The translations under genes were made by a program, and so were the position numbers. The notes beneath the pieces are model-generated. The model saw only the letters and a program-made list of their open reading frames with translations. It ran no database searches and had not been told where the DNA came from. Positions 9,340 through 27,634 of a DNA stretch of 35,887 nt are shown here, piece after piece. The stretch is taken from contig JALMLS010000396.1 of NCBI GenBank assembly GCA_038496445.1, positions 1 through 35,887 on the forward strand, read 5' to 3'. Source of the DNA: Trichosphaerium sp. ATCC 40318. Its lineage: Eukaryota; Protista; Tubulinea. Numbering within the stretch: the first letter of the stretch is position 1; each line of letters opens with the position of its first letter.

Positions 9340-9375
9340 CAACTTTTTCACTTTTTTATTATAAATTTAAATAAT

Positions 9376-10074: not shown

Positions 10075-10146
10075 CTTTCTCTTTTCTTTACTTCTTTTAT
10101 TTTTTTATTAAAATAAAATTTAAAATAACCCTTTAAATTTTTTTAA

Positions 10147-11852
10147 TTTTATCAGTTACACCTTCCGATACACTACCCTGTTACGAGTTACAGCAATCGC
10201 TGACATAGGTTTTATAGTCCTTTTTTTTATCTTTTCTACTTTTTAATTATCTTTTAAAGCAGGAGATTTACTCAACCGCTTTTAGCTTACGTTAAAAAGA
10301 TAATTTAAATTTAAATTATCTTTTTATTTCTTGCCCTATTTAGTTTATTTTTCATAAAAAGTTGCTTTTCCTAAGAAAACTCTACTTTAAAATACAAACT
10401 TTTTTGATTTTTTTTTTGATTAATTTAAACTACGTCCAGCCACCCAGCTTTCGCTGGGCCACGGCGGTATGTACGAGCGCAGGCAAGTATTCACGCGGTG
10501 TGATGATCCGCGATTACTAGCAATTCATCTTCATATTCCTATTTCAGGGAATATCCGAACAAGAGATTGTTTTATCAGACTAGCGCTAATCACTTATGAA
10601 TAGCATCTTGTTGTACCAACGTTGTATCACATTTGAAGCCAAACCATTAAGGCCATGACGACCAGTCGTCATCACTACTAACTATCATATTGCATGATTT
10701 GCTAAATTGTATTATTATTTTCACTCAATTTCATGGGTACGCCCGTTTATCCAGTAAGGCGACATATCACTACACGAGCTGACGGCGCCATGCAACACCT
10801 GGACCTAAAGTATTCTCTCAATTTTTAATATAAATTTGAAAAAAACCTACTACTTATAAATATAACTTTATCTTGGGGCATATATCTAGGTTTGTAAGAT
10901 TAAACGCGGATCATCAGATAATCAACATGATCCACTGCTGGTAATACACTCCGCCAATTTCTTAGGTTTACATCTTGCGACATATTTCCCCAGGTGAGAT
11001 ATTTACGCGTAAGCTTCACCACCGGTACAAGTCACAAAGGATTTAAAACCTCCTAGATGTCCAGCGCCAAATATCCATCGGTCACAGCGTAGATTACAAG
11101 GGTATCTAATCTTTTCACTCCCTACGCTTTCGATTACTAACGTCTATTCTTTCACAGTACGCGATTGCTCCGCATGATGGTCTTATAAATCTTAGAATTC
11201 TACTCCTAATTTATAATACCACGTACTCAAAAAAATACAAAGACATAAGTTAAATGAGTTATCCTCAGATCAACCCGAGTTTTTTACTCAAAACTTTATG
11301 GACAGTTTACTTCCCTTTACACCAATCAAGATGAGTAGCACTTGGGCCCCCGTGTTACCGCGACTGCTGGCACGAAGTTAGACAGCCTTTCCAATAATTA
11401 CTATCACTATTATCATTATTTCACTGACTTTCGACTCTGCCTTCTTAAGCGAACAATCTTTCTACAACTGTGCTAAATTTAGCCACACGGCATAACTGGA
11501 TCGTGCATTAAACTTGTCCAAAATCCCTCACTGCTGCGCCTTAACGTTCGGGTCATCTCTCCCCGCTGTGCCAGTTTACCCTCTCAGTCCTGGTACGGTC
11601 TTCGGCTAGGTAAGCTTTACCTTAAACCTACTACTTATCATTTACGATACATTCCTATGTGTCAAAAACTCGTATCTCTTTATATAAAAATTATAAATCT
11701 ATTTACTTTATTAAGCTTATTTTGCTTAACATAGCTAGCTAATATCGATTAATACTCACCTTACGGGCATTCTAAATAATATAGAATATTACCTTGCATG
11801 TGTTAAGTCCACATTAGCACTCACTCAGCGCAAAATCATACGCTAACTTTTA
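10147..11852 (-). rRNA. rns: Mitochondrial SSU rRNA, mirror copy
   Basis: Reverse complement of 17205..18910. Confidence 0.95.
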
Positions 11853-11881
11853 CTTGTTTTTACACCAACTACCTTTAATAA

Positions 11882-11952
11882 CGAGCAAATCGGACTTGAA
11901 CCGATATCTGAAAGGCCGACAACTTCTATTTTACCTTTTAAACTATTGGCCC
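11882..11952 (-). tRNA. trnD: tRNA-Asp(GUC), mirror copy
   Basis: Reverse complement of 17105..17175. Confidence 0.87.
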
Positions 11953-11955
11953 TTT

Positions 11956-12025
11956 TTTGGATAGCAGACTCGAACCTGCACTTTTGGCTCCAAAGCCAAC
12001 ACTCTACCTTTTAAGTTATACCCTG
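11956..12025 (-). tRNA. trnP: tRNA-Pro(UGG), mirror copy
   Basis: Reverse complement of 17032..17101. Confidence 0.87.
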
Positions 12026-12031
12026 TTTTTT

Positions 12032-12104
12032 TTTTGGAGGCCGGACTCGAACCGATCTCCTCAAGGGTCATGAGCCTGCGAGCTAACCTATACTCCACTC
12101 CCGA
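12032..12104 (-). tRNA. trnM: Initiator tRNA-Met(CAU), mirror copy
   Basis: Reverse complement of 16953..17025. Confidence 0.85.
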
Positions 12105-12106
12105 TT

Positions 12107-12186
12107 TTTCAGTGACGGGACTTGAACCGCACGTTTTTTCAAACACAAATTTTGAATCTGACGTGTCTACATTCCACCACACTGAC
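12107..12186 (-). tRNA. trnL: tRNA-Leu(CAA), mirror copy
   Basis: Reverse complement of 16871..16950. Confidence 0.88.
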
Positions 12187-12258
12187 TTTTTCAGGCCGGA
12201 CTTGAACCGACATCAAAGATTTTGGAAACCTCTATTTTACCAATTAAACTACTGATAC
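12187..12258 (-). tRNA. trnW: tRNA-Trp(CCA), mirror copy
   Basis: Reverse complement of 16799..16870. Confidence 0.88.
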
Positions 12259-12267
12259 CTTTTTAAC

Positions 12268-12339
12268 TTCGGGCGACAGGCATCGAACTGCAACCTTTGG
12301 GTTAAAAACCCACTGCTCTACCTATTAAGCTACGCCCCC
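12268..12339 (-). tRNA. trnK: tRNA-Lys(UUU), mirror copy
   Basis: Reverse complement of 16718..16789. Confidence 0.88.
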
Positions 12340-12342
12340 TCC

Positions 12343-12424
12343 CTAACGCGGTGGGATTCGAACCACGAAGAGAAAAACTCAATAAATTTACAATCTACTC
12401 CTTTAACCACTTGGATACACGTAC
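12343..12424 (-). tRNA. trnY: tRNA-Tyr(GUA), mirror copy
   Basis: Reverse complement of 16633..16714. Confidence 0.87.
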
Positions 12425-12428
12425 TTTT

Positions 12429-12496
12429 GTTGGGTAGTTGATTCGAACCAACGTAACTTATTCAAAATCAAGCGCCTAACCTCTCGGCATACCCAT
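12429..12496 (-). tRNA. trnQ: tRNA-Gln(UUG), mirror copy
   Basis: Reverse complement of 16561..16628. Confidence 0.85.
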
Positions 12497-12567
12497 TTAG
12501 CCCAGTGGACTCGAACCCACATCTTACAACTTATGAGTTGCTGTTTTTGCCTTTAAACTATAGTTCT
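12497..12567 (-). tRNA. tRNA-CAU (Ile/Met), mirror copy
   Basis: Reverse complement of 16490..16560. Confidence 0.8.
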
Positions 12568-12577
12568 TTAAAAAAAA

Positions 12578-12647
12578 TATCCACGTTGGACTTGAACCAA
12601 CATCGCCGAATTGAAAATACGTATCCTAACCTTTAGACGACGCAGAC
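12578..12647 (-). tRNA. trnE: tRNA-Glu(UUC), mirror copy
   Basis: Reverse complement of 16410..16479. Confidence 0.85.
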
Positions 12648-12649
12648 TT

Positions 12650-12721
12650 TGGCTCGTAACGGAATTGAACCGTTATTACACTATTTGCAATAGTATGGAT
12701 TAACCGTTATCCTAACGAGCC
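12650..12721 (-). tRNA. trnC: tRNA-Cys(GCA), mirror copy
   Basis: Reverse complement of 16336..16407. Confidence 0.93.
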
Positions 12722-12723
12722 TT

Positions 12724-12803
12724 TTTCAGTGACGGGACTTGAACCGCACGTTTTTTCAAACACGAGATCTAAATCCGACGTGTCTACATTCCACCACACT
12801 GAC
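12724..12803 (-). tRNA. trnL: tRNA-Leu(UAG), mirror copy
   Basis: Reverse complement of 16254..16333. Confidence 0.85.
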
Positions 12804-12986
12804 TTTTTTTTCTTTTTTCCTTCTAACAAGGATTTTTTATAGTTGAGATTGCTTTTTTTAAATATAGATGCAGATCGTAGTTTTGTGCATCTATGGAAAT
12901 ATAAACAATCTTTGAGATTGTTTATATTTCCATAGATGCACAAAACTACGATCTGCATCTATATTTAAAAAAAGCAATCTCAAAAA

Positions 12987-13538
12987 GACTCTATTTCCGT
13001 TATATAAGTATAATCTCTCAATAAACTCCCACTTTCTTAGAGTTCTCTGAAAACTTAAATATGAATAAATCCTACCTTCATAAACTTAACAACCAATCAC
13101 TAAATATTTCATACGACACGCAAACCTACGACGTAAATTTCAAAAAATAAGTAACCTTTCATTAATTTATCTTACTTTTATAATCTATAAAATAATACTA
13201 TAATTATATAACCTTAAATTTAACAATACTTTACGCCCATTAAAGTTAATTTTTTTAAAAGACATGTGAGGCTTTAGTTTCTGTTACTAATTCTCTTCAT
13301 CAATTTTCAAATTTCATCAAATTTTATTCATCGATGAAATTCTAAATAAAAAAAGAAATAAAACCACATGCAAAGAAAATATTCAAGAAATACAAAATTA
13401 AATATACTTATTTTAAATAATTTAAAACATTATATAAAAATCTATTGCATTTTGTATAAATTTATTTATATTTTTTTCAAAACGTTTTGAAAACTATACA
13501 AATTTTAATACCTTTTTCACGACGTCACTAATACGCAT
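12987..13538 (-). CDS. rps7: rps7-like, mirror copy
   Basis: Reverse complement of 15519..16070. Confidence 0.4.
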
Positions 13539-14666
13539 CCTCTTATTTCAACGTTTTTTATTTCTTACTTTTTTTTTTGTTGTTAAATATACTTCTTTAT
13601 TTTTTATTTTTATATTTTGCCAGCTTTTAGTGGTAATAATAGACGCTTGTTTTTTATTTCCTATTAGTATTATTATTTTTTTCTTTTTTTTTTTTCTTTT
13701 TTTTTTGCTTTTGATTTTAATTTTTTTATTTTTATTGTTATTTTTTGCAAGTTTATTTCTTTTTTTTCTTTTATCTGATCTTTTTCACAATTTATTAATT
13801 TTACTTTTATTTTTTTTACCCTTTTTTTTGTTTTACTTTTATAAAGCTGCGTATTAAACAAAAATAAATGTAAAAGCTCACGCGATTTCTGTTCGAAAAA
13901 AAAAGAGTAATATAATCTTATTAAGTTATATTACTCTTTTTTTTTCGAACTCTTTTTAAATACCCATCTTATTTAATTTTTTGTTAATATTACTAAACTA
14001 GTACCATAACTTCTTTTATACATTAATTTTGTCCATAAACTTATAACGCCATAATTTTTTAAAAATCACGCATTCATATTTATATTATTACGCGATTTTT
14101 TACCTCTATTTTTTTTTATATTAAACCTACACCTTTTATTAATCTATTAATTTATTATAAAACATGTATGTATATATTGTTTTAATTTATCTAAACTTTA
14201 TATTTATAATCACTTCTCGCTAAATTTAACCTTCACGGCTCTTTTTTAAAAAATTAAACCTACATTTGTTTGAAAAATATTTCCTATCTTTTATTTAAAA
14301 TAAATTAGATAATATACTCTTTTTTCTCTTCTTTTTCAAAATCTATCCACTAAACGCATTGACCTATTTCACGCATGCGTTTAGTGGATAATACACTTAC
14401 CTTTACTAAAATAATTTGAATATACCAAAGGCAATTTATTTTTGATAAACTTTTATATTTAAATTTTTTACACTAAACTTTCTTTTAATACCCTAAAATA
14501 AACAAAAGATCGGCTTTTAAGATACCTATAGGTATCTTAAAAGCCGATCTTTTGTTTATTTTAGGGTATTAAAAGAAAGTTTAGTGTAAAAAATTTAAAT
14601 ATAAAAGTTTATCAAAAATAAATTGCCTTTGGTATATTCAAATTATTTTAGTAAAGGTAAGTGTAT

Positions 14667-14713
14667 TATCCACTAAACGCATGCGTGAAATAGGTCAATG
14701 CGTTTAGTGGATA
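14667..14713. repeat. Hairpin, 16-bp arms, 15-nt loop (mirror 14344..14390)
   Basis: tatccactaaacgcat ... atgcgtttagtggata. Confidence 0.9.
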
Positions 14714-15106
14714 GATTTTGAAAAAGAAGAGAAAAAAGAGTATATTATCTAATTTATTTTAAATAAAAGATAGGAAATATTTTTCAAACAAATGTAGGTT
14801 TAATTTTTTAAAAAAGAGCCGTGAAGGTTAAATTTAGCGAGAAGTGATTATAAATATAAAGTTTAGATAAATTAAAACAATATATACATACATGTTTTAT
14901 AATAAATTAATAGATTAATAAAAGGTGTAGGTTTAATATAAAAAAAAATAGAGGTAAAAAATCGCGTAATAATATAAATATGAATGCGTGATTTTTAAAA
15001 AATTATGGCGTTATAAGTTTATGGACAAAATTAATGTATAAAAGAAGTTATGGTACTAGTTTAGTAATATTAACAAAAAATTAAATAAGATGGGTATTTA
15101 AAAAGA

Positions 15107-15166
15107 GTTCGAAAAAAAAAGAGTAATATAACTTAATAAGATTATATTACTCTTTTTTTTTCGAAC
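15107..15166. repeat. Hairpin, 25-bp arms (mirror 13891..13950)
   Basis: gttcgaaaaaaaaagagtaatataa ... ttatattactctttttttttcgaac. Confidence 0.92.
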
Positions 15167-15518
15167 AGAAATCGCGTGAGCTTTTACATTTATTTTTGTT
15201 TAATACGCAGCTTTATAAAAGTAAAACAAAAAAAAGGGTAAAAAAAATAAAAGTAAAATTAATAAATTGTGAAAAAGATCAGATAAAAGAAAAAAAAGAA
15301 ATAAACTTGCAAAAAATAACAATAAAAATAAAAAAATTAAAATCAAAAGCAAAAAAAAAAAGAAAAAAAAAAAGAAAAAAATAATAATACTAATAGGAAA
15401 TAAAAAACAAGCGTCTATTATTACCACTAAAAGCTGGCAAAATATAAAAATAAAAAATAAAGAAGTATATTTAACAACAAAAAAAAAAGTAAGAAATAAA
15501 AAACGTTGAAATAAGAGG

Positions 15519-16070
15519 ATGCGTATTAGTGACGTCGTGAAAAAGGTATTAAAATTTGTATAGTTTTCAAAACGTTTTGAAAAAAATATAAATAAATTTA
15601 TACAAAATGCAATAGATTTTTATATAATGTTTTAAATTATTTAAAATAAGTATATTTAATTTTGTATTTCTTGAATATTTTCTTTGCATGTGGTTTTATT
15701 TCTTTTTTTATTTAGAATTTCATCGATGAATAAAATTTGATGAAATTTGAAAATTGATGAAGAGAATTAGTAACAGAAACTAAAGCCTCACATGTCTTTT
15801 AAAAAAATTAACTTTAATGGGCGTAAAGTATTGTTAAATTTAAGGTTATATAATTATAGTATTATTTTATAGATTATAAAAGTAAGATAAATTAATGAAA
15901 GGTTACTTATTTTTTGAAATTTACGTCGTAGGTTTGCGTGTCGTATGAAATATTTAGTGATTGGTTGTTAAGTTTATGAAGGTAGGATTTATTCATATTT
16001 AAGTTTTCAGAGAACTCTAAGAAAGTGGGAGTTTATTGAGAGATTATACTTATATAACGGAAATAGAGTC
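15519..16070 (+). CDS. rps7: Probable ribosomal protein S7 (frameshifted cryptogene, divergent)
   Basis: Reconstructed segments NKFI..., KLKPHMSFKKINFNGRKVLL (cf. xKPxVEVKxRRVGGxxYQVP) and a C-terminal EGRIYSY..K match S7 motif order. Similarity is weak. Confidence 0.45.
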
Positions 16071-16073
16071 TTT

Positions 16074-16214
16074 TTGAGATTGCTTTTTTTAAATATAGAT
16101 GCAGATCGTAGTTTTGTGCATCTATGGAAATATAAACAATCTCAAAGATTGTTTATATTTCCATAGATGCACAAAACTACGATCTGCATCTATATTTAAA
16201 AAAAGCAATCTCAA
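16074..16214. repeat. Long hairpin, ~69-bp arms, 3-nt loop, with nested hairpins (mirror 12843..12983)
   Basis: ttgagattgc...aacaatct caa agattgtt...gcaatctcaa. Each arm contains an internal atagatgca...tgcatctat stem. Confidence 0.95.
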
Positions 16215-16253
16215 CTATAAAAAATCCTTGTTAGAAGGAAAAAAGAAAAAAAA

Positions 16254-16333
16254 GTCAGTGTGGTGGAATGTAGACACGTCGGATTTAGATCTCGTGTTTG
16301 AAAAAACGTGCGGTTCAAGTCCCGTCACTGAAA
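16254..16333 (+). tRNA. trnL: tRNA-Leu(UAG)
   Basis: Type II cloverleaf, loop tttagat. T-stem is one G short (gcgg[g]/cccgt). G1xA72 mismatch. Confidence 0.85.
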
Positions 16334-16335
16334 AA

Positions 16336-16407
16336 GGCTCGTTAGGATAACGGTTAATCCATACTATTGCAAATAGTGTAATAACGGTTCAATTCCGTTA
16401 CGAGCCA
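16336..16407 (+). tRNA. trnC: tRNA-Cys(GCA)
   Basis: Complete cloverleaf: ggctcgt/acgagcc acceptor, loop ttgcaaa, T-arm aacgg-ttcaatt-ccgtt. Confidence 0.95.
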
Positions 16408-16409
16408 AA

Positions 16410-16479
16410 GTCTGCGTCGTCTAAAGGTTAGGATACGTATTTTCAATTCGGCGATGTTGGTTCAAGTCCAACGTGGATA
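16410..16479 (+). tRNA. trnE: tRNA-Glu(UUC)
   Basis: Loop ttttcaa. The 3' acceptor strand needs one extra C (ccaac[c]gtggat) to pair with gtctgcg. Confidence 0.85.
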
Positions 16480-16489
16480 TTTTTTTTAA

Positions 16490-16560
16490 AGAACTATAGT
16501 TTAAAGGCAAAAACAGCAACTCATAAGTTGTAAGATGTGGGTTCGAGTCCACTGGGCTAA
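16490..16560 (+). tRNA. tRNA with CAU anticodon (Ile-lysidine type or elongator Met)
   Basis: Anticodon arm gcaac/tcataa/gttgt has only a 6-nt loop. T-stem gtggg/[c]ccac. Acceptor positions 1-4 pair poorly. Confidence 0.8.
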
Positions 16561-16628
16561 ATGGGTATGCCGAGAGGTTAGGCGCTTGATTTTGAATAAG
16601 TTACGTTGGTTCGAATCAACTACCCAAC
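16561..16628 (+). tRNA. trnQ: tRNA-Gln(UUG)
   Basis: Acceptor atgggta/tacccaa, loop ttttgaa. About three single nucleotides are missing (position 9, anticodon stem, T-stem). Confidence 0.85.
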
Positions 16629-16632
16629 AAAA

Positions 16633-16714
16633 GTACGTGTATCCAAGTGGTTAAAGGAGTAGATTGTAAATTTATTGAGTTTTTCTCTTCGTGGTTCGAA
16701 TCCCACCGCGTTAG
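16633..16714 (+). tRNA. trnY: tRNA-Tyr(GUA)
   Basis: gtaga/ttgtaaa/tttat arm and long variable arm. T-stem gtgg[g]/cccac. Acceptor pairs 1-2 mismatched. Confidence 0.88.
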
Positions 16715-16717
16715 GGA

Positions 16718-16789
16718 GGGGGCGTAGCTTAATAGGTAGAGCAGTGGGTTTTTAACCCAAAGGTTGCAGTTCGATGCCTGTCGCCCGAA
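16718..16789 (+). tRNA. trnK: tRNA-Lys(UUU)
   Basis: gtggg/tttttaa/cccaa arm. T-stem gcag[g]/cctgt. Acceptor pairs 1-2 mismatched. Confidence 0.9.
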
Positions 16790-16798
16790 GTTAAAAAG

Positions 16799-16870
16799 GT
16801 ATCAGTAGTTTAATTGGTAAAATAGAGGTTTCCAAAATCTTTGATGTCGGTTCAAGTCCGGCCTGAAAAA
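16799..16870 (+). tRNA. trnW: tRNA-Trp(CCA)
   Basis: gaggt/ttccaaa/atctt arm, canonical D and T arms. Acceptor pairs 1 and 3 mismatched. Confidence 0.9.
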
Positions 16871-16950
16871 GTCAGTGTGGTGGAATGTAGACACGTCAGA
16901 TTCAAAATTTGTGTTTGAAAAAACGTGCGGTTCAAGTCCCGTCACTGAAA
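16871..16950 (+). tRNA. trnL: tRNA-Leu(CAA)
   Basis: Near-identical to tRNA-Leu(UAG) except the anticodon arm tcaga/ttcaaaa/tttgt. Confidence 0.9.
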
Positions 16951-16952
16951 AA

Positions 16953-17025
16953 TCGGGAGTGGAGTATAGGTTAGCTCGCAGGCTCATGACCCTTGAGGAG
17001 ATCGGTTCGAGTCCGGCCTCCAAAA
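16953..17025 (+). tRNA. trnM: Initiator tRNA-Met(CAU)
   Basis: Loop ctcatga. One G duplication (cag[g]g/ccctt) restores the three G-C pairs typical of initiator tRNAs. Confidence 0.85.
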
Positions 17026-17031
17026 AAAAAA

Positions 17032-17101
17032 CAGGGTATAACTTAAAAGGTAGAGTGTTGGCTTTGGAGCCAAAAGTGCAGGTTCGAGTCTGCTATCCAA
17101 A
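17032..17101 (+). tRNA. trnP: tRNA-Pro(UGG)
   Basis: ttggc/tttgga/gccaa arm with a 6-nt loop (needs tttgg[g]a). T-stem one base short. Acceptor pairs 1-2 mismatched. Confidence 0.88.
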
Positions 17102-17104
17102 AAA

Positions 17105-17175
17105 GGGCCAATAGTTTAAAAGGTAAAATAGAAGTTGTCGGCCTTTCAGATATCGGTTCAAGTCCGATTTGCTCG
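17105..17175 (+). tRNA. trnD: tRNA-Asp(GUC)
   Basis: gaag[g]/ttgtcgg/ccttt arm. Acceptor gggccaa/ttg[g]ctc with G discriminator. Confidence 0.88.
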
Positions 17176-17204
17176 TTATTAAAGGTAGTTGGTGTAAAAA
17201 CAAG

Positions 17205-18910
17205 TAAAAGTTAGCGTATGATTTTGCGCTGAGTGAGTGCTAATGTGGACTTAACACATGCAAGGTAATATTCTATATTATTTAGAATGCCCGTAAGGTG
17301 AGTATTAATCGATATTAGCTAGCTATGTTAAGCAAAATAAGCTTAATAAAGTAAATAGATTTATAATTTTTATATAAAGAGATACGAGTTTTTGACACAT
17401 AGGAATGTATCGTAAATGATAAGTAGTAGGTTTAAGGTAAAGCTTACCTAGCCGAAGACCGTACCAGGACTGAGAGGGTAAACTGGCACAGCGGGGAGAG
17501 ATGACCCGAACGTTAAGGCGCAGCAGTGAGGGATTTTGGACAAGTTTAATGCACGATCCAGTTATGCCGTGTGGCTAAATTTAGCACAGTTGTAGAAAGA
17601 TTGTTCGCTTAAGAAGGCAGAGTCGAAAGTCAGTGAAATAATGATAATAGTGATAGTAATTATTGGAAAGGCTGTCTAACTTCGTGCCAGCAGTCGCGGT
17701 AACACGGGGGCCCAAGTGCTACTCATCTTGATTGGTGTAAAGGGAAGTAAACTGTCCATAAAGTTTTGAGTAAAAAACTCGGGTTGATCTGAGGATAACT
17801 CATTTAACTTATGTCTTTGTATTTTTTTGAGTACGTGGTATTATAAATTAGGAGTAGAATTCTAAGATTTATAAGACCATCATGCGGAGCAATCGCGTAC
17901 TGTGAAAGAATAGACGTTAGTAATCGAAAGCGTAGGGAGTGAAAAGATTAGATACCCTTGTAATCTACGCTGTGACCGATGGATATTTGGCGCTGGACAT
18001 CTAGGAGGTTTTAAATCCTTTGTGACTTGTACCGGTGGTGAAGCTTACGCGTAAATATCTCACCTGGGGAAATATGTCGCAAGATGTAAACCTAAGAAAT
18101 TGGCGGAGTGTATTACCAGCAGTGGATCATGTTGATTATCTGATGATCCGCGTTTAATCTTACAAACCTAGATATATGCCCCAAGATAAAGTTATATTTA
18201 TAAGTAGTAGGTTTTTTTCAAATTTATATTAAAAATTGAGAGAATACTTTAGGTCCAGGTGTTGCATGGCGCCGTCAGCTCGTGTAGTGATATGTCGCCT
18301 TACTGGATAAACGGGCGTACCCATGAAATTGAGTGAAAATAATAATACAATTTAGCAAATCATGCAATATGATAGTTAGTAGTGATGACGACTGGTCGTC
18401 ATGGCCTTAATGGTTTGGCTTCAAATGTGATACAACGTTGGTACAACAAGATGCTATTCATAAGTGATTAGCGCTAGTCTGATAAAACAATCTCTTGTTC
18501 GGATATTCCCTGAAATAGGAATATGAAGATGAATTGCTAGTAATCGCGGATCATCACACCGCGTGAATACTTGCCTGCGCTCGTACATACCGCCGTGGCC
18601 CAGCGAAAGCTGGGTGGCTGGACGTAGTTTAAATTAATCAAAAAAAAAATCAAAAAAGTTTGTATTTTAAAGTAGAGTTTTCTTAGGAAAAGCAACTTTT
18701 TATGAAAAATAAACTAAATAGGGCAAGAAATAAAAAGATAATTTAAATTTAAATTATCTTTTTAACGTAAGCTAAAAGCGGTTGAGTAAATCTCCTGCTT
18801 TAAAAGATAATTAAAAAGTAGAAAAGATAAAAAAAAGGACTATAAAACCTATGTCAGCGATTGCTGTAACTCGTAACAGGGTAGTGTATCGGAAGGTGTA
18901 ACTGATAAAA
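17205..18910 (+). rRNA. rns: Mitochondrial small-subunit rRNA
   Basis: Universal motifs: taacacatgcaag, gtgccagcagtcgcggtaa, gattagataccc, gtcagctcgtg, gaattgctagtaatcgcg, tcgtaacagggtag. Ends approximate. Confidence 0.97.
18731..18764. repeat. 34-bp perfect palindrome inside the SSU rRNA expansion
   Basis: taaaaagataatttaaatttaaattatcttttta. Confidence 0.9.
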
Positions 18911-18982
18911 TTAAAAAAATTTAAAGGGTTATTTTAAATTTTATTTTAATAAAAAAATAAAAGAAGTAAAGAAAAGAGAAAG

Positions 18983-19681
18983 ATGTCAGTTTTGGAGCAT
19001 TTTGATCCCGTAGTAAATAATTTAGGTTGTTTGTGTTTTCAAGTTGGTTTTTATTTTGGTAAGTTGTTTTTTTTTTTATGGATTTTTTTACGGTTTATTT
19101 TTTTTAAATTAAGTGTTTTAGGGATGGTTCTTTTAGTTTTTTTGAATTTATAGTTAATTTTGTTGGGGAGTAACTGGGAAATTAACGGTTGTTTTTTAAA
19201 TAATAAAAATAAAAGAATATTAAACCTTTCATTTTTGTTGTTTTCGCGAGATTTTGTTTTTAAATATAATAGCAATGATACCCGGAGATTATCAATTACA
19301 AGTTTTTGGGCAGTTGCATTTTTTTTTGCAGCGTAATTTGAATATATGCAGGTTTATTAAGGTTTATTTTAAACGAACTGGTTTATTACTTTATTTGTAC
19401 CGGAAATAAAAGCGTAATTCTTTTTATTTTAATAATATAGAGTTTGTATCTTATATTTTAAGGTAGTTAGTCTACATGTGCGTTTAATGGCTAATATATT
19501 AGCTGGCACGCATTATTAAATGTTTATGCGCAGTGTTTTATGCGAGTATAGCTTATATTTACAAACAATTTTAATCGTAGTGACGTTTTAATTATGATTT
19601 TAGAATTTATAGTTGCGGCAATACAGCTTATATTTTCTTAATGTTAATGTGCTTTATTTAAGCGATTTTTTATCTAATTAA
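18983..19681 (+). CDS. atp6: ATP synthase subunit a (cryptogene)
   Basis: MSVLEHFD start. Reconstructed IEFVSYI..VVSLHVRLMANILAGHALL and LEFIVAAIQAYIF. Multiple single-base gaps. Confidence 0.93.
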
Positions 19682-19717
19682 ATTATTTAAATTTATAATA
19701 AAAAAGTGAAAAAGTTG

Positions 19718-20737
19718 ATGGATAAAAGGTTATTTGCGGAAGAATTTAAAATATTTACATTATATTTAAAATTATTAATAAGTGTTGATATTAACGCATA
19801 TATAGAAATATCGCTTTTATGTCGACATATTATTTATTTTTTTTATGATTTATTTATTTGATATATAAATTTAGAAATAAAACTAGATATTGTTAATAAC
19901 TATTATAAAGGGGTTTACGACATTATAATTTGCAATATAGTGATAAAATAAAAAATCGTCAAAGCATCGTTGGCATTATGTAGATGCTAGCCATGGCCTT
20001 TTTTTTTAAGTTATGGACGTTACTTTTATTTTTAGGGCTATTACGTGGATGCATTGTCAAAATTGTGCCCTGGTTTATTTTTATTTGGTACAATGTGTCA
20101 TTATTATCAGTTTATGGTTGGTGGCGTGATTTAGATAGAGAGTGATTTTAGGTCATAGAACAGTGTAATAGCAAGAAACTTACAATATGTTTTATTTTTT
20201 TTTTAGTTGCGGAATGATGTTTTTTGTACCTTTTTTTGCGCTTTTTTTTATTATGTTTGTGTTATGTAGCTAGAATAGGAGGTAATGACCAGGTTGTGGT
20301 ATAAGTAGCCCAGCGCCTTTTGTATACCTTTGATAAATACTTTATTATTATTATATTCAGTTTAATTTGTCAGGTAGCTACTATGGCTGTAGCCGCCGTG
20401 AATATTATCATGTTATTTGGGTTATGTGGTAACATTGGTTTTTGGATTATTATTTTTATTTAATCAGTGATAGAATATTTTACATTACCTTTTAGTATAA
20501 CCAGCGGGTTTTTGGAAGTACATCTTTATGTTAACAGGTTTACATGGTTGTCATGTAATAGCCGGTGAATTTTTTTGTGCGTATGTTTGGTCGATATCTA
20601 CATATGGTTATAGTGCACGTATTTACAGGGATTTGCTTTTGCTAATTGTATTGACATTTTGTAGATGTTATTTGATAGTTTTATTTATAGGTGTTTATAT
20701 GTGAACAGACTTTTTGAATGGAATAAAAGTGATTTAG
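19718..20737 (+). CDS. cox3: Cytochrome c oxidase subunit 3 (cryptogene; conserved part starts ~19955, possible N-terminal extension from 19718)
   Basis: Reconstructed HRWHYVDASPWP, GWWRDLDRE, FMLTGLHGCHV, YWHFVDVIW (W=TGA). Confidence 0.93.
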
Positions 20738-20805
20738 TTTTTAATATGCTTTATATTTATCAATAGTGTTAAGTTACAGTGATAAAAAAAAAAAGAAAAA
20801 ATATA

Positions 20806-20977
20806 ATGATTCAATAGATATTTTATTTTTTCAACAGAAATTATTTTATTATTTTTTACTTTATTTATAGTATATTTTTTGTGTTTTTTTTTATATTAAA
20901 GGTATCTCAGAAATAACAAAATTGAGGTATGAATTAATGTTAAATATGTACAAGTAAATAAATTGTATGTCTAGTTA
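20806..20977 (+). CDS. atp8: ATP synthase subunit 8 (cryptogene)
   Basis: MIQ[L/I]D start (cf. MPQLD), one hydrophobic segment, then ISEITKLR (cf. ISxILKLR). Confidence 0.7.
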
Positions 20978-20983
20978 AACAAA

Positions 20984-21230
20984 ATGTCATTTAGTATAAT
21001 TTTATTATTAGAAGAGGAATATTAAATTTATCATGTGTTTTTTTGTAACTCTTTTTTGTATTTAATTTTATGCTTATTAGAATTTTTTAGTTTAGAAGTT
21101 ATTTTAGCTGACGTACTATTTTATTTTTTGTTTTATTATTATATTTGAACTGAGCAATATTGTTGGAGGGTTTGGTTCTTTATAGTTTTAAAGCGTTAAT
21201 AAAATGGAAAGGCTTAATATTATTACGGTT
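20984..21230 (+). CDS. nad4L: Probable NADH dehydrogenase subunit 4L (cryptogene)
   Basis: Short hydrophobic frame with R-x-N-I-L, FNF and TEAILL..LVL (cf. AESAIGLAILV). Confidence 0.5.
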
Positions 21231-21256
21231 AAAAAAATTAAAAAAATATAAAATAA

Positions 21257-23183
21257 ATGGACGATCATGTAATTTCTTATCATTTTAATGGTTTAGGTAA
21301 GTAAGCTACGTTGCAGATGAGTAGTTTATGCTATAGAATCATGAAAGTGAGTGCTGGTGAGCGAGTAGTTTTTGCAGATGGAGGACTTTAGGAGTAGTTA
21401 TGAACTTAGAAGCTAAGAGAATAGTATCTTAGTTTTCGGACGAGATATAGTATTCAAATAGGTGATTTTTTATTTTGAACTGGTAAAGTTTTAAATGTGA
21501 ACGTTGCGCGTATAAAAGTGGTTTTATAGGTGATGGTTTAGTCAATCTTTAGTTGTTAAAAAATATATAAATTGTAGTGGGTTGTAGTTTTTGATTCTAT
21601 AGAGAGTTATTCTGAGTATGATGGACTAATTGATGATTTGGCGAAAAATTTTTAGAGTTTTAAGGAATGGGAATATATTACATGGGATTCTTATCTTTAT
21701 AGGAGAAGAATAAGCATATAGTAAATACTGTAATATTATTCAAAGTACAAATGGTTTATTGCTGGTAATTTAGTTTTACCTTTATAATGCAAACTCAACA
21801 AACAAAAGAAATTTGCCTTTATTTTGTTTGTTGGAAATCTATTAGGTCAGTTTGGTAGTAAAGAAATTGTACATCAATAAAAATAGATTTTTACAATACA
21901 TAAGGATCCAAAATTTTACAGATTACAAACAATGTGAAACATCATAATTATTATTATCAGCAAGTTAATTTAAATATGTTGAGAAAAAAGCTCCAGGATT
22001 ATAAGAAGAACATCAATAGCTCAAGCTTTGGAAACTGTGTTAAAGCAATAGATTCTATGTACCAATAGGAAAAGTCAAAGGGAATTAGTTTTGGGAGATA
22101 GACAGACAGAAAAACAGCAATTTGTTTAGATACATAATACATCAAAGTAGAGAATTTAGAAGAAAAAGCCAAGATTTGGTGCAGTAAATGTATTTTTAAT
22201 GCTATTTATGTAGCTATAGGTCAAAAAATGTCAACGTTAAAAGAATAGCATGTTATTAAAAATGAAAAATTGTTGAAGAATGTAACTTTAATATGTTCAA
22301 CTGCAAGTTCAGCAATGGTTATCAATATTTAGCTCCTTATGTAGTACATCTATAGGAGAATATTGAAGAGAATTGGGTATGGATGCTTTAATTATATATG
22401 ATGATTTAAGTAAGCATGCTAATATTTATAGCAAATATCTCTTTTATTGGGTCGTCCTCCAGGACGAGAAGCTTATCCTGGGATGTTTTTTATTTGCATT
22501 CTCGTTTATTAGAAAGATCCGCAAAATTAGTGAATCTTGGGCTGTATGGCGTTGTGGTTTAACGCGCTATGAAAATGAGAACATGTGTAGAGAGATTAGG
22601 AGAACTTTAACAGCGTTACCTATAGCAGAAACTATAGAAGAGATGTATCAGCTTATATACCAACAAACTTAATTTCTATTACGATGGACAAATTGTTTTA
22701 GATACAAACTTGTTTAAAAAAGGGTAAGACCTGCTGTTAATTTAGGTTATCTGTAAGTAGGGTAGGTCAATGGCTCAAAGTAAAATGATGAATATTTAGC
22801 AAAAGATTTAAAATTAGAATTGGCTCAATTTCGTGAGTTGAAGATTTTGCTAAATTTGATCGTCTTTAGATGAGGCTACCTTAAATTTAATAATAGAGGT
22901 CAAAGATTAATACAAATGATGTTCAAAAAAATAAAATGCCGATGCAACAGATCATCAGTTGTTATCTTTGTTTGCAGCATCTGAAGTTTTTTAGATAATA
23001 TTGCTGTAAATAAGTAGCTACTTTTGAAAATATTATGCATAAAGTAAGTATAGAAACAGTATATTTGGTAGAAATTGGTTTAAGATAATATAAGAAAACG
23101 TCAGTAAAGTTAAATGTAAAAAAATTAAATGCTTTTTTGAAGAGTTTGCAGATTGTTTTGTTTTAATTTAAAAAATTAGTTAA
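21257..23183 (+). CDS. atp1: ATP synthase F1 alpha subunit (cryptogene, large internal insertion)
   Basis: Reconstructed [88 protein letters not shown]. Confidence 0.97.
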
Positions 23184-23186
23184 AGT

Positions 23187-24362
23187 ATGTTGCTAAAGCA
23201 GAATCTACGGGGAAAGAGGTCTTTAAGCGTGTAAAGCCGCATGTAACAATAGAACTATAGGGCACGTAGATCATGGTAAACAACGTTAACATCAGCAATA
23301 ACTCAGGTATTATCGTTTTATACAGAACTAAAATTTTAATTATGATGAAATTGATAAAACTCCAGAAGAAAGGCGCGTGGGATTACTATAAACGCATTAC
23401 ATGTGAATATGAAACGGAAACAGACATTATACACATGTTGATTGCCCAGGACATCAGATTTTATGAAGAATATGATAATAGGAGCAATCCAGATGACGGA
23501 GTTATTTTAGTAGTAGCTTGACAGATGGTCCTCAAGAACAAACAAGGGACATATAATATTAATAAGTCAAGTAGGTATTAAAAATTTGGTGCTTTTTTTA
23601 ATAAATTAGATGCTATATTGACCCGAATTTAAAAGATTTAGTATCTTTGGAAACTTAGAGCTTTTAGAAACTTATGTTATGAAGATGTACCTTTCTCTGT
23701 GGGATCGGCGCATGAGCTATGAACGAAGTGGAAGAAAAGGGTTTTTCAGAAAATGGCATAAAAGTGTAAAAGAATTAATGCGCTAATAGATGAAAAAATA
23801 CCTTTACAGTTAGAAATAAAGATGATCGTTTATAATGCCTATAGAAGATGTTTATACAATTCAGGTCGAGGTACTGTAGTATCGGATGCATAGAACAAGG
23901 TATTGTAAAAAGTGTCAAGATTTGGAATTGGTAGGTTCTGATGTAATAAAAACAACATGTTACGTGTAGAAATGTTTCATAAATAATGAACGATGCTATG
24001 GCGGGTGAAAATGTTGGGTTTTAATAAAAGTGTAAAAAGAAAACAAGTTATACGAGAATGGTTTTATGTGATTTAAAAGCGTTGTGCCTAAAAATGAATT
24101 TAGAGCGCAGTCTATATTTTGACAAGAAAAGAGGGAGGAAGAAAAAACCATTTAGTTCTGTTTTCAACCTCAATTTTTTTTTAGAACATCTAATGTTACG
24201 GGACAATAAAGGTTTTAAATGAGGATGAAGTAATTTTACCTGGGCAAATGAAAAAATAGAGTAAAGTTGATGTCTAAAGTTGCGTTAAATGAAAATTACA
24301 ATTTACAATAAGAGAAGGACAAATACAGTAGGTAAGGAAAAATAATAGAAATAATTAAGTAA
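23187..24362 (+). CDS. tufA: Elongation factor Tu (cryptogene)
   Basis: Reconstructed [30 protein letters not shown][K/R]ARGITIN, RHYTHVDCPGH, QMDGVILVV, NKLD, SGRGTVV, FTIREG. Confidence 0.97.
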
Positions 24363-24370
24363 AATCAGTT

Positions 24371-25480
24371 ATGTGGAAAAGTAATAAATTACAAAAGTAG
24401 CATATGAGTTTGGATTGGTTATAGAGCACATCTAATTTAAGTTATAATTGAAGTTATGGTGGGTAGCGTTAATTTTTTTATTAATTCAATATTAACGGGT
24501 GTATTATTAGCGGCAATATATACGCAGGTGATTTTGAAGGTCTTTAAATGTAATTATGCGTGAAGTTTACGAAGGTGATGATTAAGATTAGCTCATGTAC
24601 ATGGTGCTGTATGTTTTTTTTTGTTGTTTATATTCATATGCTAAGGGGATTGTTTATAGTTCTTATTTATATCCTAGACACATTTATGAATGTCAGGAGT
24701 ATTAGTATTGTTAGTAATGTATTTACTGCTTTATTAGTTATATTTTACCTTGAGTCAAATGAGCTATTGAGCTACCATTATTATATTATATCTAATAGAT
24801 GTTTTCCAGGGTGAAAGAAGAAATTTTTCCTTTTGTTATGGGAGGTTTTCTTTTAGTCATGAAATGTTATACAGATGTTTTAGTTTACATTATTTTTTTA
24901 GCTTTTTTTTATTAGGTTTAGTTTTGTGCATTTAATTTTATTACATGAAACTGGTCGACAAATAATACAGAGGAGATGGATTTATAGATTCGGTAGCTTT
25001 GGTGTATATTTTTTAATAAAAGATTTATATGTGTTTTTTTAGTTATAGGTGTTTATGGTTATATGTATTTTCATGATCTTATGCAACATGTATGAAAATA
25101 TGATTTTGGCAAACATTATGTGACGCCAAGATTAATAAAACCAGAATGTATTTTTTGCCTTTTTATGTATGATAAAATTGGTTTATAATAAAAATTTAGG
25201 TTGTTACATTTAGCTTGTGCCATAGGTTGTTTGTTAGGCTTGGTTTTTTGGGCCGTAGTGAATTGAAAGGGTTTATTTTGATATTATAGGAAAAACATAT
25301 GTATGTTTTTAGCTTGTAACTTAGTTGATTTAGCGTATGTTCGGGTGAAACTATGCGTTATCCTTGATCTTGTAATTTAATGAAAGCTTAATTATTTATT
25401 ATTTAGGTTTTTAGTTTTATATATAGTATGTAGTAGATCATGATCTACTATAATAATTAAAATATTAAAAAGTAAAATAA
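24371..25480 (+). CDS. cob: Apocytochrome b (cryptogene)
   Basis: Reconstructed PSNLSYNWSYG, YIHMLRGL, GYILPWGQMSYWA, KPEWYFLPFY. 3' end approximate. Confidence 0.96.
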
Positions 25481-25656
25481 TAAATAATATTCCTTTTTTT
25501 TTAGAAAAATTATTTAAAAAAACTAAAATAGTGCTTTTAAATAATTTTTATGTATTTAGCGAATCTGTTCAATGAACTTTAGAAGATTTTAGAGAACAAT
25601 TAGAGTTAGATTTTGCTATGTTTAATGATTATCTTGAAAAAAAAAAAAAAAAATAA

Positions 25657-26406
25657 ATGAGAACAGTTTAAAATATACTGTTAAAAAGTTTAGCAATTAG
25701 AAGTAGATTAACAGGACAAATACATCATATGTGAGGTTAAATCCATCAGGCAATTTGTGCTAGATCTAGTATTAGATATTTGAAGAGAATATCGGATCAA
25801 AATGCTAATATAGGTTCGTATATAGAATAGATATTATTATCCAAGAAAAGAGAGAAAAAAACGTAGGAGTATTTCGTACGTTTACAACGTTTATTATTAT
25901 TTTATAATTTCTTACGCATAGGCGTATAAGCGATATGATAAGAAAGCAAGGCCAAATCGGAAAGTGTAGTTGGTCAAATTCTAAATTTTTAGAATGTCGA
26001 TTGGGGGTAGTGTATTTAGATTAAATATTGTGGATACTATGTATGATTCACGAAGTTTTTATCTTGTGGTTTTTATTATTAAATGGTGTAGTATAAGGCA
26101 TCCAAATTATACAGTAAGATTATATAAATGTTAAGTTTAAATTATGAGGACAAAAATTATTTACATGTAAATTAATTTTAAGTTGCAGCGTTTACGTTGT
26201 TTGGTTGTTGATTTACTTTAATGTACCAATTTTTATCTTTTTGATTTTAGTATGTGATGTTTTTATTTAATAAGTACCCTAAACGGAAAGTGTCGTGTAT
26301 CCACTTGTAGTTTAGATTTTAACATAGAAGAACATATAATAGTTCCGTAAAAAAACAGAGCGGAAGATTTTCATATAAGAATATTTAGAGTTTACAATAT
26401 AAATAA
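25657..26406 (+). CDS. rps4: Ribosomal protein S4 (cryptogene)
   Basis: Reconstructed LECRLGVVVFRLNIVDTMYDSRSFISCG..LNGVVIRHPNYTV fits the S4 RNA-binding domain. N-terminal DLTG. Confidence 0.8.
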
Positions 26407-26410
26407 AAAA

Positions 26411-27009: not shown

Positions 27010-27184
27010 TACGACGAGGCTTAGTCCTATAGGTAGACGTAGAGAGGGTAGGGTTATTGAAGAATTAATTTTGGTTGGTAAAGCGTCGTTATGTAAATTT
27101 TAGGAGTCTTTTTATTTGGATTTAGTTACTTTTGTGGGAAAGTAATTGTTGGATCGCTCTAAGTTATTTAGGTGCCAAAAATAA
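26999..27184 (+). CDS. rps16: Possible ribosomal protein S16 (cryptogene, short)
   Basis: RREGRVIEEL (cf. RDGRxIExLG) followed by YVNF..L..W. Weak similarity. Confidence 0.4.
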
Positions 27185-27186
27185 GG

Positions 27187-27633: not shown

Positions 27634-27634
27634 T

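What the first reader, a model, noticed from the sequence alone, without database searches (positions are those of the whole stretch)
17205..18910. SSU rRNA is also a cryptogene
Seen: universally conserved motifs are one base short and are fixed by duplication. Examples: cataccgcc[c]gt at ~18594 (decoding-site motif ACCGCCCGU), gc[g]gtgaatac at ~18563, gcatggc[c]gccgtcagctcgtg at ~18270, ggc[g]gcagcagt at ~17520. Inference: editing acts on mRNA, tRNA and rRNA alike, as expected for a polymerase-coupled mechanism.
Basis: partly seen in the sequence, partly recalled or inferred. Interest (0 to 1): 0.7.

Follow-up and report, generated by a model that had tools for sequence, protein, structure and literature searches.

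The report
Mitochondrial SSU rRNA repaired by base-doubling
The mitochondrial small-subunit rRNA gene of this amoeba lacks about 43 single letters, many in universally conserved motifs, and public RNA data show them restored as a copy of the neighbouring letter; this rare editing type has been published only for the amoeba BB2, where it is less dense.

Summary

- **Gene:** The window is a mitochondrial contig of a 70-Mb amoeba genome. Its SSU rRNA gene lies at about 17193-18906 (+), with a mirror copy at 10151-11864 (-).
All four short motifs are in the DNA as quoted.
- **RNA evidence:** Contigs from three studies match the DNA with no substitutions but carry single-letter insertions: 5 in 17193-17360, 19 in 17391-18119 and 15 in 18144-18760. 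Loose ends add at least 3 near the 3' end. The total is about 43 sites, or 1 per 40 nt.
- **Doubling rule:** 15 sites are placed exactly. Each doubles a neighbouring letter (10 G, 3 C, 1 A, 1 U; chance about 6e-7).
- **Examples tested:** The fourth (17520 G) is supported only by a profile-score gain.
- **Not an assembly error:** A DNA-type run that includes a ~4% diverged relative lacks the same letters. The edited words are absent from the whole assembly.
- **What it is:** This is BB2-type neighbour-doubling insertional editing (Yang et al. 2017). BB2's SSU rRNA has 18 sites, so the density here is about 2.3 times higher.
- **Mechanism:** Polymerase stuttering is the simplest explanation but is not shown.
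- **Earlier work:** The scan had already found this editing on other DNA of the same genome (LSU rRNA, mRNAs, tRNAs). This is a new member of a known kind.

The parts
17193..18906 (+). Mitochondrial SSU rRNA gene, a cryptogene: 1714 nt of DNA, and a mature RNA of about 1757 nt after about 43 insertions.
   Evidence: RF00177 at 401.8 bits over 17206-18630. Helix-45 sequence at 18880-18906. Illumina adapter letters joined to RNA contigs at 17193 and after 18906 (+/-1) in X6, and RNA depth falls from 21930 to 3.6 beyond 18925.
10151..11864 (-). Second, identical SSU rRNA gene copy in the other arm of the perfect palindrome (position p maps to 29057-p).
18270..18270 (+). Edit site: C doubled, giving GCAUGGCCGCCGUCAGC (helix 34 region).
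   Evidence: table 4: present in X1, X6 and X10; 0 of 12.1 in the DNA-type run X2..
18302..18302 (+). Edit site: A doubled, giving CCUUAACUGG (the conserved UUAAGU loop).
   Evidence: deletion predicted in the CM alignment.
18384..18384 (+). Edit site: G doubled, giving UAGUGGAUGACG.
18417..18418 (+). Edit site: GG becomes GGG.
   Evidence: CM deletion.
18437..18437 (+). Edit site: G doubled, giving CAACGGUUGG.
   Evidence: CM deletion.
18471..18471 (+). Edit site: G doubled.
18488..18488 (+). Edit site: C doubled.
18504..18504 (+). Edit site: U doubled, giving GUUCGGAUUAUUCC.
   Evidence: CM deletion.
18531..18531 (+). Edit site: G doubled, giving GAUGGAAUUGCUAGUAAUCG.
   Evidence: CM deletion.
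18563..18563 (+). Edit site: G doubled, giving CCGCGGUGAAUAC. It completes the 3' strand of an 8-bp helix.
18593..18594 (+). Edit site: CC becomes CCC, giving ACCGCCCGU (decoding-site motif).
18612..18614 (+). Edit site: GGG becomes GGGG.
18866..18866 (+). Edit site inferred from an RNA loose end: G doubled.
   Evidence: table 7 (X6: G plus the next DNA letters).
18884..18884 (+). Edit site inferred from an RNA loose end: G doubled (helix 45).
   Evidence: table 7.
18904..18904 (+). Edit site inferred from an RNA loose end: G doubled, two letters before the mature 3' end.
   Evidence: table 7 (GAT followed by adapter).
17520..17520 (+). Not individually verified.
   Evidence: Two-base deletion in the CM alignment. 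Profile gain of +4.4 bits. Lies inside RNA contigs that carry 19 and 23 insertions.
18623..18850 (+). AT-rich expansion inside helix 44. It is retained in the RNA and probably has no edit site in 18612-18760. It is 206 nt shorter in the diverged relative.
   Evidence: (X6 and X10 contigs run to 18760; X2 joint 18622 to 18829).
16336..17177 (+). Upstream tRNA cluster, also edited, followed by a 15-nt spacer before the rRNA.
   Evidence: RNA contigs over 16409-16887 and 16968-17222 carry 11 and 5 insertions.

Best explanation
**Shown.** The SSU rRNA gene at 17193-18906, and its mirror copy, is a cryptogene. The DNA lacks about 43 single nucleotides that the functional rRNA needs. The RNA contains them, each as a second copy of an adjacent encoded nucleotide and mostly G. 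No substitutions, deletions or dinucleotide insertions were seen. The sites lie in stems and in loops of the conserved core, including the decoding-site CCC, and probably avoid the AT-rich helix-44 expansion.

**Inferred.** The extra letters are most likely added during transcription. The mitochondrial RNA polymerase would read one template base twice (a stutter or one-base realignment) at sites specified by an unknown signal. The assembly holds one nuclear phage-type polymerase gene, on C209. This is the same scheme proposed for amoeba BB2 and would explain why rRNA, tRNA and mRNA are treated alike.
For: **RNA against DNA.**
- X10, a recorded RNA-Seq library: contig over 17213-18076 with 0 other letters and 23 insertions; contig over 18144-18762 with 1 other letter and 15 insertions.
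- X6: contigs with 5, 19 and 15 insertions over 17193-17360, 17391-18119 and 18144-18760.
- X1 carries a SMART template-switch oligo, so it is cDNA, and it shows the same insertions.
- The DNA-type run X2 shows 0 insertions at all 12 listed sites. Its contigs include one identical to the window (18128-18279) and a relative with 16 substitutions and 0 indels over 18250-18622.

**Doubling rule.** 15 of 15 exact sites double a neighbour (P about 6e-7). 10 of 15 are G (P = 3.5e-4).

**Restoration of conserved sequence.** Adding the 15 letters raises a bacterial 16S profile score from 293.7 to 355.6 bits. 200 sets of random doublings gave 281.5 +/- 8.6 bits, maximum 303.2.

**No intact copy.** Edited words covering 5 sites are absent from both strands of the 70-Mb assembly. 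The unedited 45-mer occurs 5 times.

**Precedent.** BB2: Yang et al. 2017, PMC5421314.

**Polymerase.** One phage-type RNAP gene was found.
Against: - All runs were Logan contigs, not raw reads. Per-site editing efficiency, unedited precursors and timing cannot be measured.
- Only 12 of the insertions were listed by position. Three more come from loose ends, and the rest are known only as counts per contig.
- X1, a cDNA library, also holds unedited-form contigs (for example 16923-17735 with 1 gap). These could be carried-over mtDNA or unedited RNA.
- X2 and X6 are DNA and RNA only by the tool's guess.
- No cis signal is visible in the 15 site contexts, so site choice is unexplained.
- Nothing here shows that editing is co-transcriptional.
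Confidence: 0.85

Rival explanations
1. The missing letters are homopolymer under-calls of a long-read assembly. The DNA really has them and there is no editing.
For: All the missing letters sit in runs. The C369 copy differs from the window at 6 of 3460 positions, including two one-base doublet contractions inside the SSU, so some assembly noise exists.
Against: Four copies on two contigs are identical. Independent short-read contigs in X2 and X1 reproduce the unedited form with 0 gaps. A ~4% diverged relative lacks the same 12 letters. Most affected runs are only 1 nt long in the DNA (12 of 15), which is not where homopolymer errors occur. The noise rate of 0.17% compares with 2.5% missing letters.
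Confidence: 0.02
2. The RNA is transcribed from a separate, intact SSU gene (nuclear, or on an unassembled mitochondrial molecule). The window copy is a pseudogene.
For: The assembly is in 642 contigs and may be incomplete. The search tool warns that absence of a match is not proof of absence.
Against: Edited-form words for 5 sites are absent from both strands of the assembly, while the unedited word is found 5 times. The covariance search of the genome found only the five unedited copies. The DNA-type run X2 has 0 depth for the inserted form at all 12 sites. Apart from the insertions, RNA and window are identical over about 1.6 kb. A relative conserves the same 12 letter-lacking sites without indels, which is not expected of a decaying pseudogene.
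Confidence: 0.03
3. Editing is real but post-transcriptional. A dedicated machinery would cut, add a letter and religate, or would be guided by trans-acting RNAs or proteins, rather than relying on polymerase stutter.
For: Site choice needs some recognition system. Kinetoplastid U-insertion works this way. X1 contains unedited-form contigs that could be precursors.
Against: The inserted letter always equals a neighbour (15 of 15). Re-reading a template base explains this at no cost, whereas a cut-and-add enzyme would need four specificities. No guide-like copy of the edited sequence is present on either strand for 5 sites. In X6 and X10 only edited contigs assembled over the rRNA, and an edited contig spans tRNAs, the spacer and the rRNA 5' end. 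In BB2, unedited reads were 0.33%.
Confidence: 0.1

Closest known systems
Mitochondrial insertional editing of amoeba BB2 (Heterolobosea); Yang et al. 2017, Genome Biol Evol 9:1161, PMC5421314
   Same: Only single-nucleotide insertions. The inserted base is always identical to an adjacent encoded base. G predominates (84% in BB2; 10 of 15 here). rRNAs, tRNAs and mRNAs are all edited. Sites lie in stems and loops. No local motif is visible. The mitochondrial DNA carries very large inverted repeats.
   Different: The SSU rRNA has about 43 sites in 1714 nt here against 18 in 1654 nt in BB2, roughly 2.3 times denser. It is a different organism. Notes from other agents suggest an amoebozoan, which I did not test. 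Efficiency and accuracy are not measured here.
Physarum polycephalum (myxomycete) mitochondrial insertional editing, including the SSU rRNA (Mahendran et al. 1994, as cited in PMC5421314)
   Same: Co-transcriptional-type nucleotide insertion that affects mRNA, tRNA and rRNA and restores conserved rRNA structure.
   Different: By my own knowledge, Physarum inserts mostly C. According to PMC5421314, its inserted base is often not identical to a neighbour and some insertions are dinucleotides. Here every placed insertion is a single-base doubling, mostly G, and no consistent substitution was seen.
Paramyxovirus P-gene (and filovirus GP) polymerase stuttering
   Same: The polymerase re-reads a template base and adds a G or A identical to the neighbouring one.
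   Different: The viral sites are long homopolymer slippery tracts and give a mixture of products. Here 12 of 15 sites double a lone base, and only the edited form assembled in the RNA runs.
Kinetoplastid U insertion/deletion editing
   Same: Cryptogenes are restored by nucleotide insertion in mitochondrial RNA.
   Different: That system is U-only, guide-RNA directed, post-transcriptional, error-prone and limited to mRNAs. Here all four bases are inserted, the rRNA is edited, and no guide-like copies were found.

Membership tests
BB2-type neighbour-doubling insertional RNA editing | RNA differs from DNA only by single-nucleotide insertions | tested here: met
   RNA contigs show 0-1 other letters and 5, 19, 23 and 15 insertions. 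All 12 listed events are single letters. The only shared substitution, 18654 A>G, is absent from X1 RNA and so looks like a strain difference.
BB2-type neighbour-doubling insertional RNA editing | The inserted base is always identical to an adjacent encoded base | tested here: met
   15 of 15 exactly placed sites; chance about 6e-7. About 28 further sites are not placed.
BB2-type neighbour-doubling insertional RNA editing | Guanosine predominates among the inserted bases | tested here: met
   10 G, 3 C, 1 A and 1 U against 22.8% G in the gene; P = 3.5e-4. The 12 listed sites are the 'best supported' ones, not a random sample.
BB2-type neighbour-doubling insertional RNA editing | rRNA, tRNA and mRNA are all edited | tested here: met
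   Insertions appear in RNA contigs over the tRNA cluster (11 and 5), the SSU rRNA (about 43) and the downstream coding region (8-9 in 18940-19300).
BB2-type neighbour-doubling insertional RNA editing | Very high efficiency, with under 1% unedited reads | tested here: inconclusive
   Only contigs were available. X6 and X10 assembled only the edited form. X1 holds both forms, possibly from DNA carry-over.
BB2-type neighbour-doubling insertional RNA editing | Co-transcriptional action (polymerase stutter) | not testable with these tools
   This is only inferred, and it is also only inferred for BB2.
BB2-type neighbour-doubling insertional RNA editing | Common descent with the BB2 lineage | not tested
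   The organism's identity is hidden. An actin search and an atlas search gave no taxonomic signal. Other agents' notes point to Amoebozoa.
Physarum-type insertional editing | Mostly C insertions, not tied to the neighbour's identity, with some dinucleotide insertions | tested here: not met
   Mostly G, all doublings, and no dinucleotide among the placed sites.
Bacterial-type SSU rRNA (Rfam RF00177) | Score above the gathering threshold over the full model | tested here: met
   401.8 bits against a gathering score of 50, over model positions 1-1533. The 3' end is misaligned because of the helix-44 insert.

The most novel reading that the evidence does not exclude
This organism is an amoebozoan unrelated to the heterolobosean BB2. 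If so, neighbour-doubling insertional editing arose at least twice or is much older than thought. The rRNA here would be the densest case known, with a DNA gene lacking one letter of the decoding-site CCC. The 12 sites tested are all conserved in a ~4% diverged relative, so comparing species could expose the still unknown signal that tells the polymerase where to stutter.
Probability: 0.4. Interest if true: 0.75.

Novelty: new member of a known kind. Interest (0 to 1): 0.55.

Why it matters
- **Second organism.** rRNA cannot be rescued by ribosomal frameshifting. Missing letters in the SSU rRNA that reappear in RNA therefore prove that correction happens at the RNA level, and for non-coding RNA too. 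In the papers I could search, this neighbour-doubling editing had been described only in BB2.
- **Density.** The SSU rRNA here has about 2.3 times as many sites as BB2's.
- **Independent data.** Public RNA data from three studies are available.
- **A relative.** A diverged relative keeps the same sites.
- **Open questions.** This is a better system for asking how a phage-type mitochondrial RNA polymerase can be made to read one template base twice at defined places. It may also show how such cryptogenes spread, for example by constructive neutral evolution.
- **Annotation.** Organelle annotation pipelines and rRNA-based surveys will misread such genes.

Tried and rejected
1. **JGI metagenome contigs.** Two scans for a full-length edited rRNA, using 29-nt and 26-nt edit-free words, found nothing.
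2. **Spurious ORF route.** I tried to reach RNA contigs through an ORF that spans three edit sites. The protein search found no candidate. No ORF of 30 aa or more lies wholly inside an edit-free interval.
3. **Taxonomic placement.** The ESM atlas search on an mtRNAP exon gave no usable taxa. The actin exon search returned only near-identical actins from all eukaryotes. HSP90 and an actin-related gene are split by introns into pieces too short for the length filter. The organism's position relative to BB2 stays untested. From memory only, a 70-Mb marine amoeba with giant-virus genes resembles a published Trichosphaerium draft. A paper search gave nothing to confirm this.
4. **Pfam on the window's ORFs.** No family matched any of ten of the window's longest ORFs, which fits the cryptogene reading.
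5. **Deletion columns as a site list.** Covariance-model and MAFFT deletion columns over-predict in 17772-18119 (about 10 against 6 observed). They also sometimes name the wrong base: consensus U at 18270, where the RNA has C. They are leads, not sites.
6. **Sequence context.** The 15 placed sites show no shared flanking base and no purine-pyrimidine rule. With only 15 sites, a weak motif cannot be excluded.
7. **Skipping joints.** Joints in X6 and X10 that skip 79-230 nt have short sides of 20-40 nt and were treated as cross-matches from other organisms' rRNA, not as processing.

Full report
**Where the finding sits.** The window is contig C318 of a 70.3-Mb, 642-contig eukaryotic assembly.
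- It is AT-rich, with GC between 20 and 39%. GC skew flips sign at about 14,500.
- It contains a perfect palindrome with no spacer: arms 2412-14528 and 14529-26645 are 100% complementary.
- Only 15 ORFs of 80 aa or more exist in 35.9 kb. Ten of the longest ORFs tested match no Pfam family.
- Each palindrome arm carries a tRNA cluster followed by an SSU rRNA gene.
- The gene matches Rfam RF00177 at 401.8 bits over 17206-18630 (+) and 10427-11851 (-).
- The model stops early because helix 44 holds an AT-rich insert of about 230 nt. The helix-45 sequence, and so the real 3' end, lies at about 18906.

**Checking the observation.**
- The covariance-model alignments show many one-base deletions inside blocks that otherwise align with high posterior probability. 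I wrote these predictions into the notebook before looking at RNA.
- As a control I fetched bacterial 16S genes and aligned 67 of them with the gene.
- The gene has 23 single-column gaps at columns occupied in at least 95% of the bacterial sequences. Eleven have well-matched flanks.
- The same count on each bacterial gene against the others gave means of 0.22 and 0.01.
- Bacteria are not an ideal control for a mitochondrial rRNA, but the excess is large.

**The decisive test: RNA against DNA.** One search found public runs. One call laid contigs of four of them on 16300-19300.

| Run | Kind | Interval | Other letters | Insertions |
|---|---|---|---|---|
| X10 | recorded RNA-Seq cDNA | 17213-18076 | 0 | 23 |
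| X10 | recorded RNA-Seq cDNA | 18144-18762 | 1 | 15 |
| X6 | RNA by the tool's guess | 17193-17360 | 0 | 5 |
| X6 | RNA by the tool's guess | 17391-18119 | 0 | 19 |
| X6 | RNA by the tool's guess | 18144-18760 | 1 | 15 |

- X6 is RNA by the tool's guess only; its contigs end in Illumina adapters exactly at the rRNA ends.
- X1 carries the SMART template-switch oligo at a contig end, so it is a cDNA library (the oligo is recognised from my own knowledge). It shows the same insertions at very high depth.
- The tool printed 12 of the 78 indel places. They are "put in behind" 18269 C, 18301 A, 18383 G, 18416 G, 18436 G, 18470 G, 18487 C, 18503 T, 18530 G, 18562 G, 18592 C and 18611 G.
- Three loose ends in X6 consist of an extra G followed by the next DNA letters. 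They add sites at 18866, 18884 and 18904.

**The doubling rule.** In all 15 placed sites the inserted letter equals an adjacent encoded letter.
- In 12 of them the doubled letter stands alone in the DNA.
- Given the gene's sequence, the chance of 15 of 15 is about 6e-7.
- Ten of the 15 are G against 22.8% G in the gene (P = 3.5e-4).

**The insertions restore conserved sequence.** I scored the gene against a profile built from the 67 bacterial 16S genes.
- The DNA form scores 293.7 bits. With the 15 letters added it scores 355.6 bits.
- 200 sets of 15 random doublings of the same bases in the same span gave 281.5 +/- 8.6 bits, with a maximum of 303.2.

**How many sites.**
- The counts per contig are 5 (17193-17360), 19 (17391-18119), 15 (18144-18760) and at least 3 (18761-18906).
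- Overlapping contigs (X10 17213-18076; X1 17772-18138, 18109-18209 and 18180-18398) limit what can hide in the two small uncovered intervals.
- The total is about 43, with a plausible range of 42-46. That is one per about 40 nt and implies a mature RNA of about 1757 nt.

**Predicting unplaced sites.** I doubled each of the 1220 homopolymer runs in turn and ranked them by profile-score gain.
- Ten of the 12 placed sites between 18269 and 18611 appear among 13 clusters with a gain of at least 3.5 bits.
- The method proposes 19 clusters between 17424 and 18163. The RNA contigs show 19-20 insertions in that span.
I count it as supported but not individually verified.
- C18580 gains 7.3 bits and may be one of the three unlisted insertions in the 18144-18760 contig.

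**Where the sites fall.**
- By the Rfam structure lines, some sites lie in helices. Examples are 18270, and 18563, where the added G completes the 3' strand of an 8-bp helix.
- Other sites lie in loops or single strands, such as 18302 in the UUAAGU loop, and 18531.
- One is the CCC of the decoding-site motif (18593-4).
- The AT-rich helix-44 insert probably has none in 18612-18760 (P = 0.005 at the density of the neighbouring core). All but at most one of the three unlisted insertions must lie in 18144-18268.
- Editing is therefore site-specific, not general slippage. Many GG doublets in the same region are encoded normally.

**Is the DNA really short?**
- Four of the five SSU copies, on C318 and C291, are identical over 1714 nt.
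- The fifth copy, on C369, has two further one-base contractions: CC to C at 17688 in the GUGCCAGCAG loop, and AA to A at 18726.
- C369 differs from the window at 6 of 3460 positions overall, so I read those differences as assembly noise of about 0.17%.
- The DNA-type run X2 contains low-depth contigs identical to the window (18128-18279 and 18906-19237, with 0 gaps).
- X2 also contains a relative with 16 substitutions and no indel over 18250-18622. A different lineage therefore lacks the same 12 letters in its DNA.
- X2 shows 0 depth for the inserted form at all 12 sites.
- Edited-form words covering five sites are absent from both strands of the whole assembly. The unedited 45-mer is found five times.
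- The covariance search of the assembly found only the five unedited copies.
- This makes assembly error, a second intact gene and guide-like templates very unlikely, within the limits of an incomplete assembly.

**Other RNA classes and ends.**
- RNA contigs over the tRNA cluster carry 11 (16409-16887) and 5 (16968-17222) insertions.
- Contigs over the coding region downstream carry 8-9 insertions in 18940-19300.
- The 16968-17222 contig runs through tRNAs, the 15-nt spacer and the first 30 nt of the rRNA, and it is edited. This hints that precursors are already edited, but a contig does not prove a single molecule.
- Adapter letters joined at 17193 and after 18906 (+/-1) mark the mature ends. 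The drop of X6 depth from 21,930 to 3.6 beyond 18925 agrees with the 3' end.

**What is known.** Yang et al. 2017 (PMC5421314) described this pattern in the mitochondria of the heterolobosean amoeba BB2.
- They occur in mRNAs, both rRNAs and 12 of 25 tRNAs.
- Its SSU rRNA is 1654 nt with 18 sites (15 G, 2 C, 1 U) in stems and loops.
- Unedited reads were about 0.33%. No motif and no guide RNAs were found. Polymerase stutter is proposed but unproven.
- A 2025 overview still lists heteroloboseids, citing only that paper, among the lineages with pervasive mitochondrial editing (PMC12710240).
- Four further full-text searches found no second organism.
- Physarum also edits its mitochondrial rRNAs by insertion. 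According to PMC5421314, its insertions are only sometimes next to an identical base and include dinucleotides. The pattern here does not fit that.

**Mechanism.**
- *Shown:* insertion-only, neighbour-identical, site-specific, G-biased correction that acts on rRNA, tRNA and mRNA.
- *Inferred:* the single phage-type mitochondrial RNA polymerase (one nuclear gene on C209) copies one template base twice at marked positions.
- The doubling rule is what a one-base realignment of the nascent RNA would give. A post-transcriptional cut-and-add system would need to recognise which of four bases to add.
- How the sites are marked is unknown. The 15 contexts share no flanking base.

**Relation to the rest of the scan.** Other agents had already reported the same editing on other DNA of this genome: LSU rRNA s1-383649, mRNAs at 18983-27633 s1-409495, tRNAs at 16254-17175 s1-409532, and other mitochondrial contigs s1-390469 and s1-390466.
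- My gap counts over the tRNA and coding flanks agree with those reports.
- They call BB2 "unrelated". Other notes mention gene families shared across Amoebozoa.
- I could not test the organism's position.

**Verdict.** It is a new, denser member of the BB2 type of editing, not a new kind. The polymerase-coupled mechanism remains the best but unproven explanation.

**Limits.**
- Only assembled contigs, not raw reads, were available.

Noticed in passing
window 2412-26645 (centre 14528/14529); also 547-2442 with 26616-28512: There is a perfect 12,117-nt palindrome with no spacer, and further 100% inverted segments beyond it. Almost the first 28.6 kb of the contig is one hairpin-like inverted duplication, and GC skew flips at its centre. 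On contig C291 the two SSU copies face each other tail to tail instead. This may be the real genome architecture (BB2 has a 49-kb inverted repeat) or a foldback in the assembly.
   Followed up: partly
G000:C369 (L005), equivalent to window 17688 and 18726: A fifth SSU copy has two extra one-base contractions of doublets: CC to C in the universal GUGCCAGCAG loop, and AA to A. The contig differs from the window at 6 of 3460 positions, so this is probably assembly noise. If real, these would be newly arising edit sites.
   Followed up: partly
window 18654: The RNA contigs of X6 and X10 read G where the DNA and the X1 RNA read A. This is the only substitution shared by two runs. It is most simply a strain polymorphism in the helix-44 insert, not A-to-I editing.
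   Followed up: partly
window 18623-18828: The diverged relative in run X2 joins 18622 directly to 18829, skipping 206 nt. The AT-rich helix-44 expansion is therefore lineage-specific. It is retained in the RNA of this organism. X1 coverage is highest just upstream of the insert's A-rich tract (about 18640-18657), a pattern that oligo-dT priming on that tract would give (my inference).
   Followed up: partly
run X2 on window 16300-19300: The DNA-type run holds two mitochondrial types. One is identical to the window at a depth of 3-4. The other is about 4% diverged in the rRNA at a depth of 9-16, with many indels in the tRNA-spacer region (27 other letters and 24 gaps in 16411-16950).
   Followed up: no
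G000:C209:80072-81521: Only one nuclear gene for a phage-type (T7-like) RNA polymerase was found, split by introns. It is the candidate enzyme for the stutter model.
   Followed up: partly
window, whole: No LSU rRNA match reached the Rfam gathering score in this 35.9-kb contig, so the LSU gene lies on another mitochondrial contig. Rfam and ARAGORN also disagree on several tRNAs: six Rfam and four ARAGORN calls per arm, only partly overlapping. That is expected if the tRNA genes also lack letters.
   Followed up: no
G000, many contigs: The Pfam actin model gives 139 matches across the nuclear genome, which points to a very large family of actin and actin-like genes.
   Followed up: no
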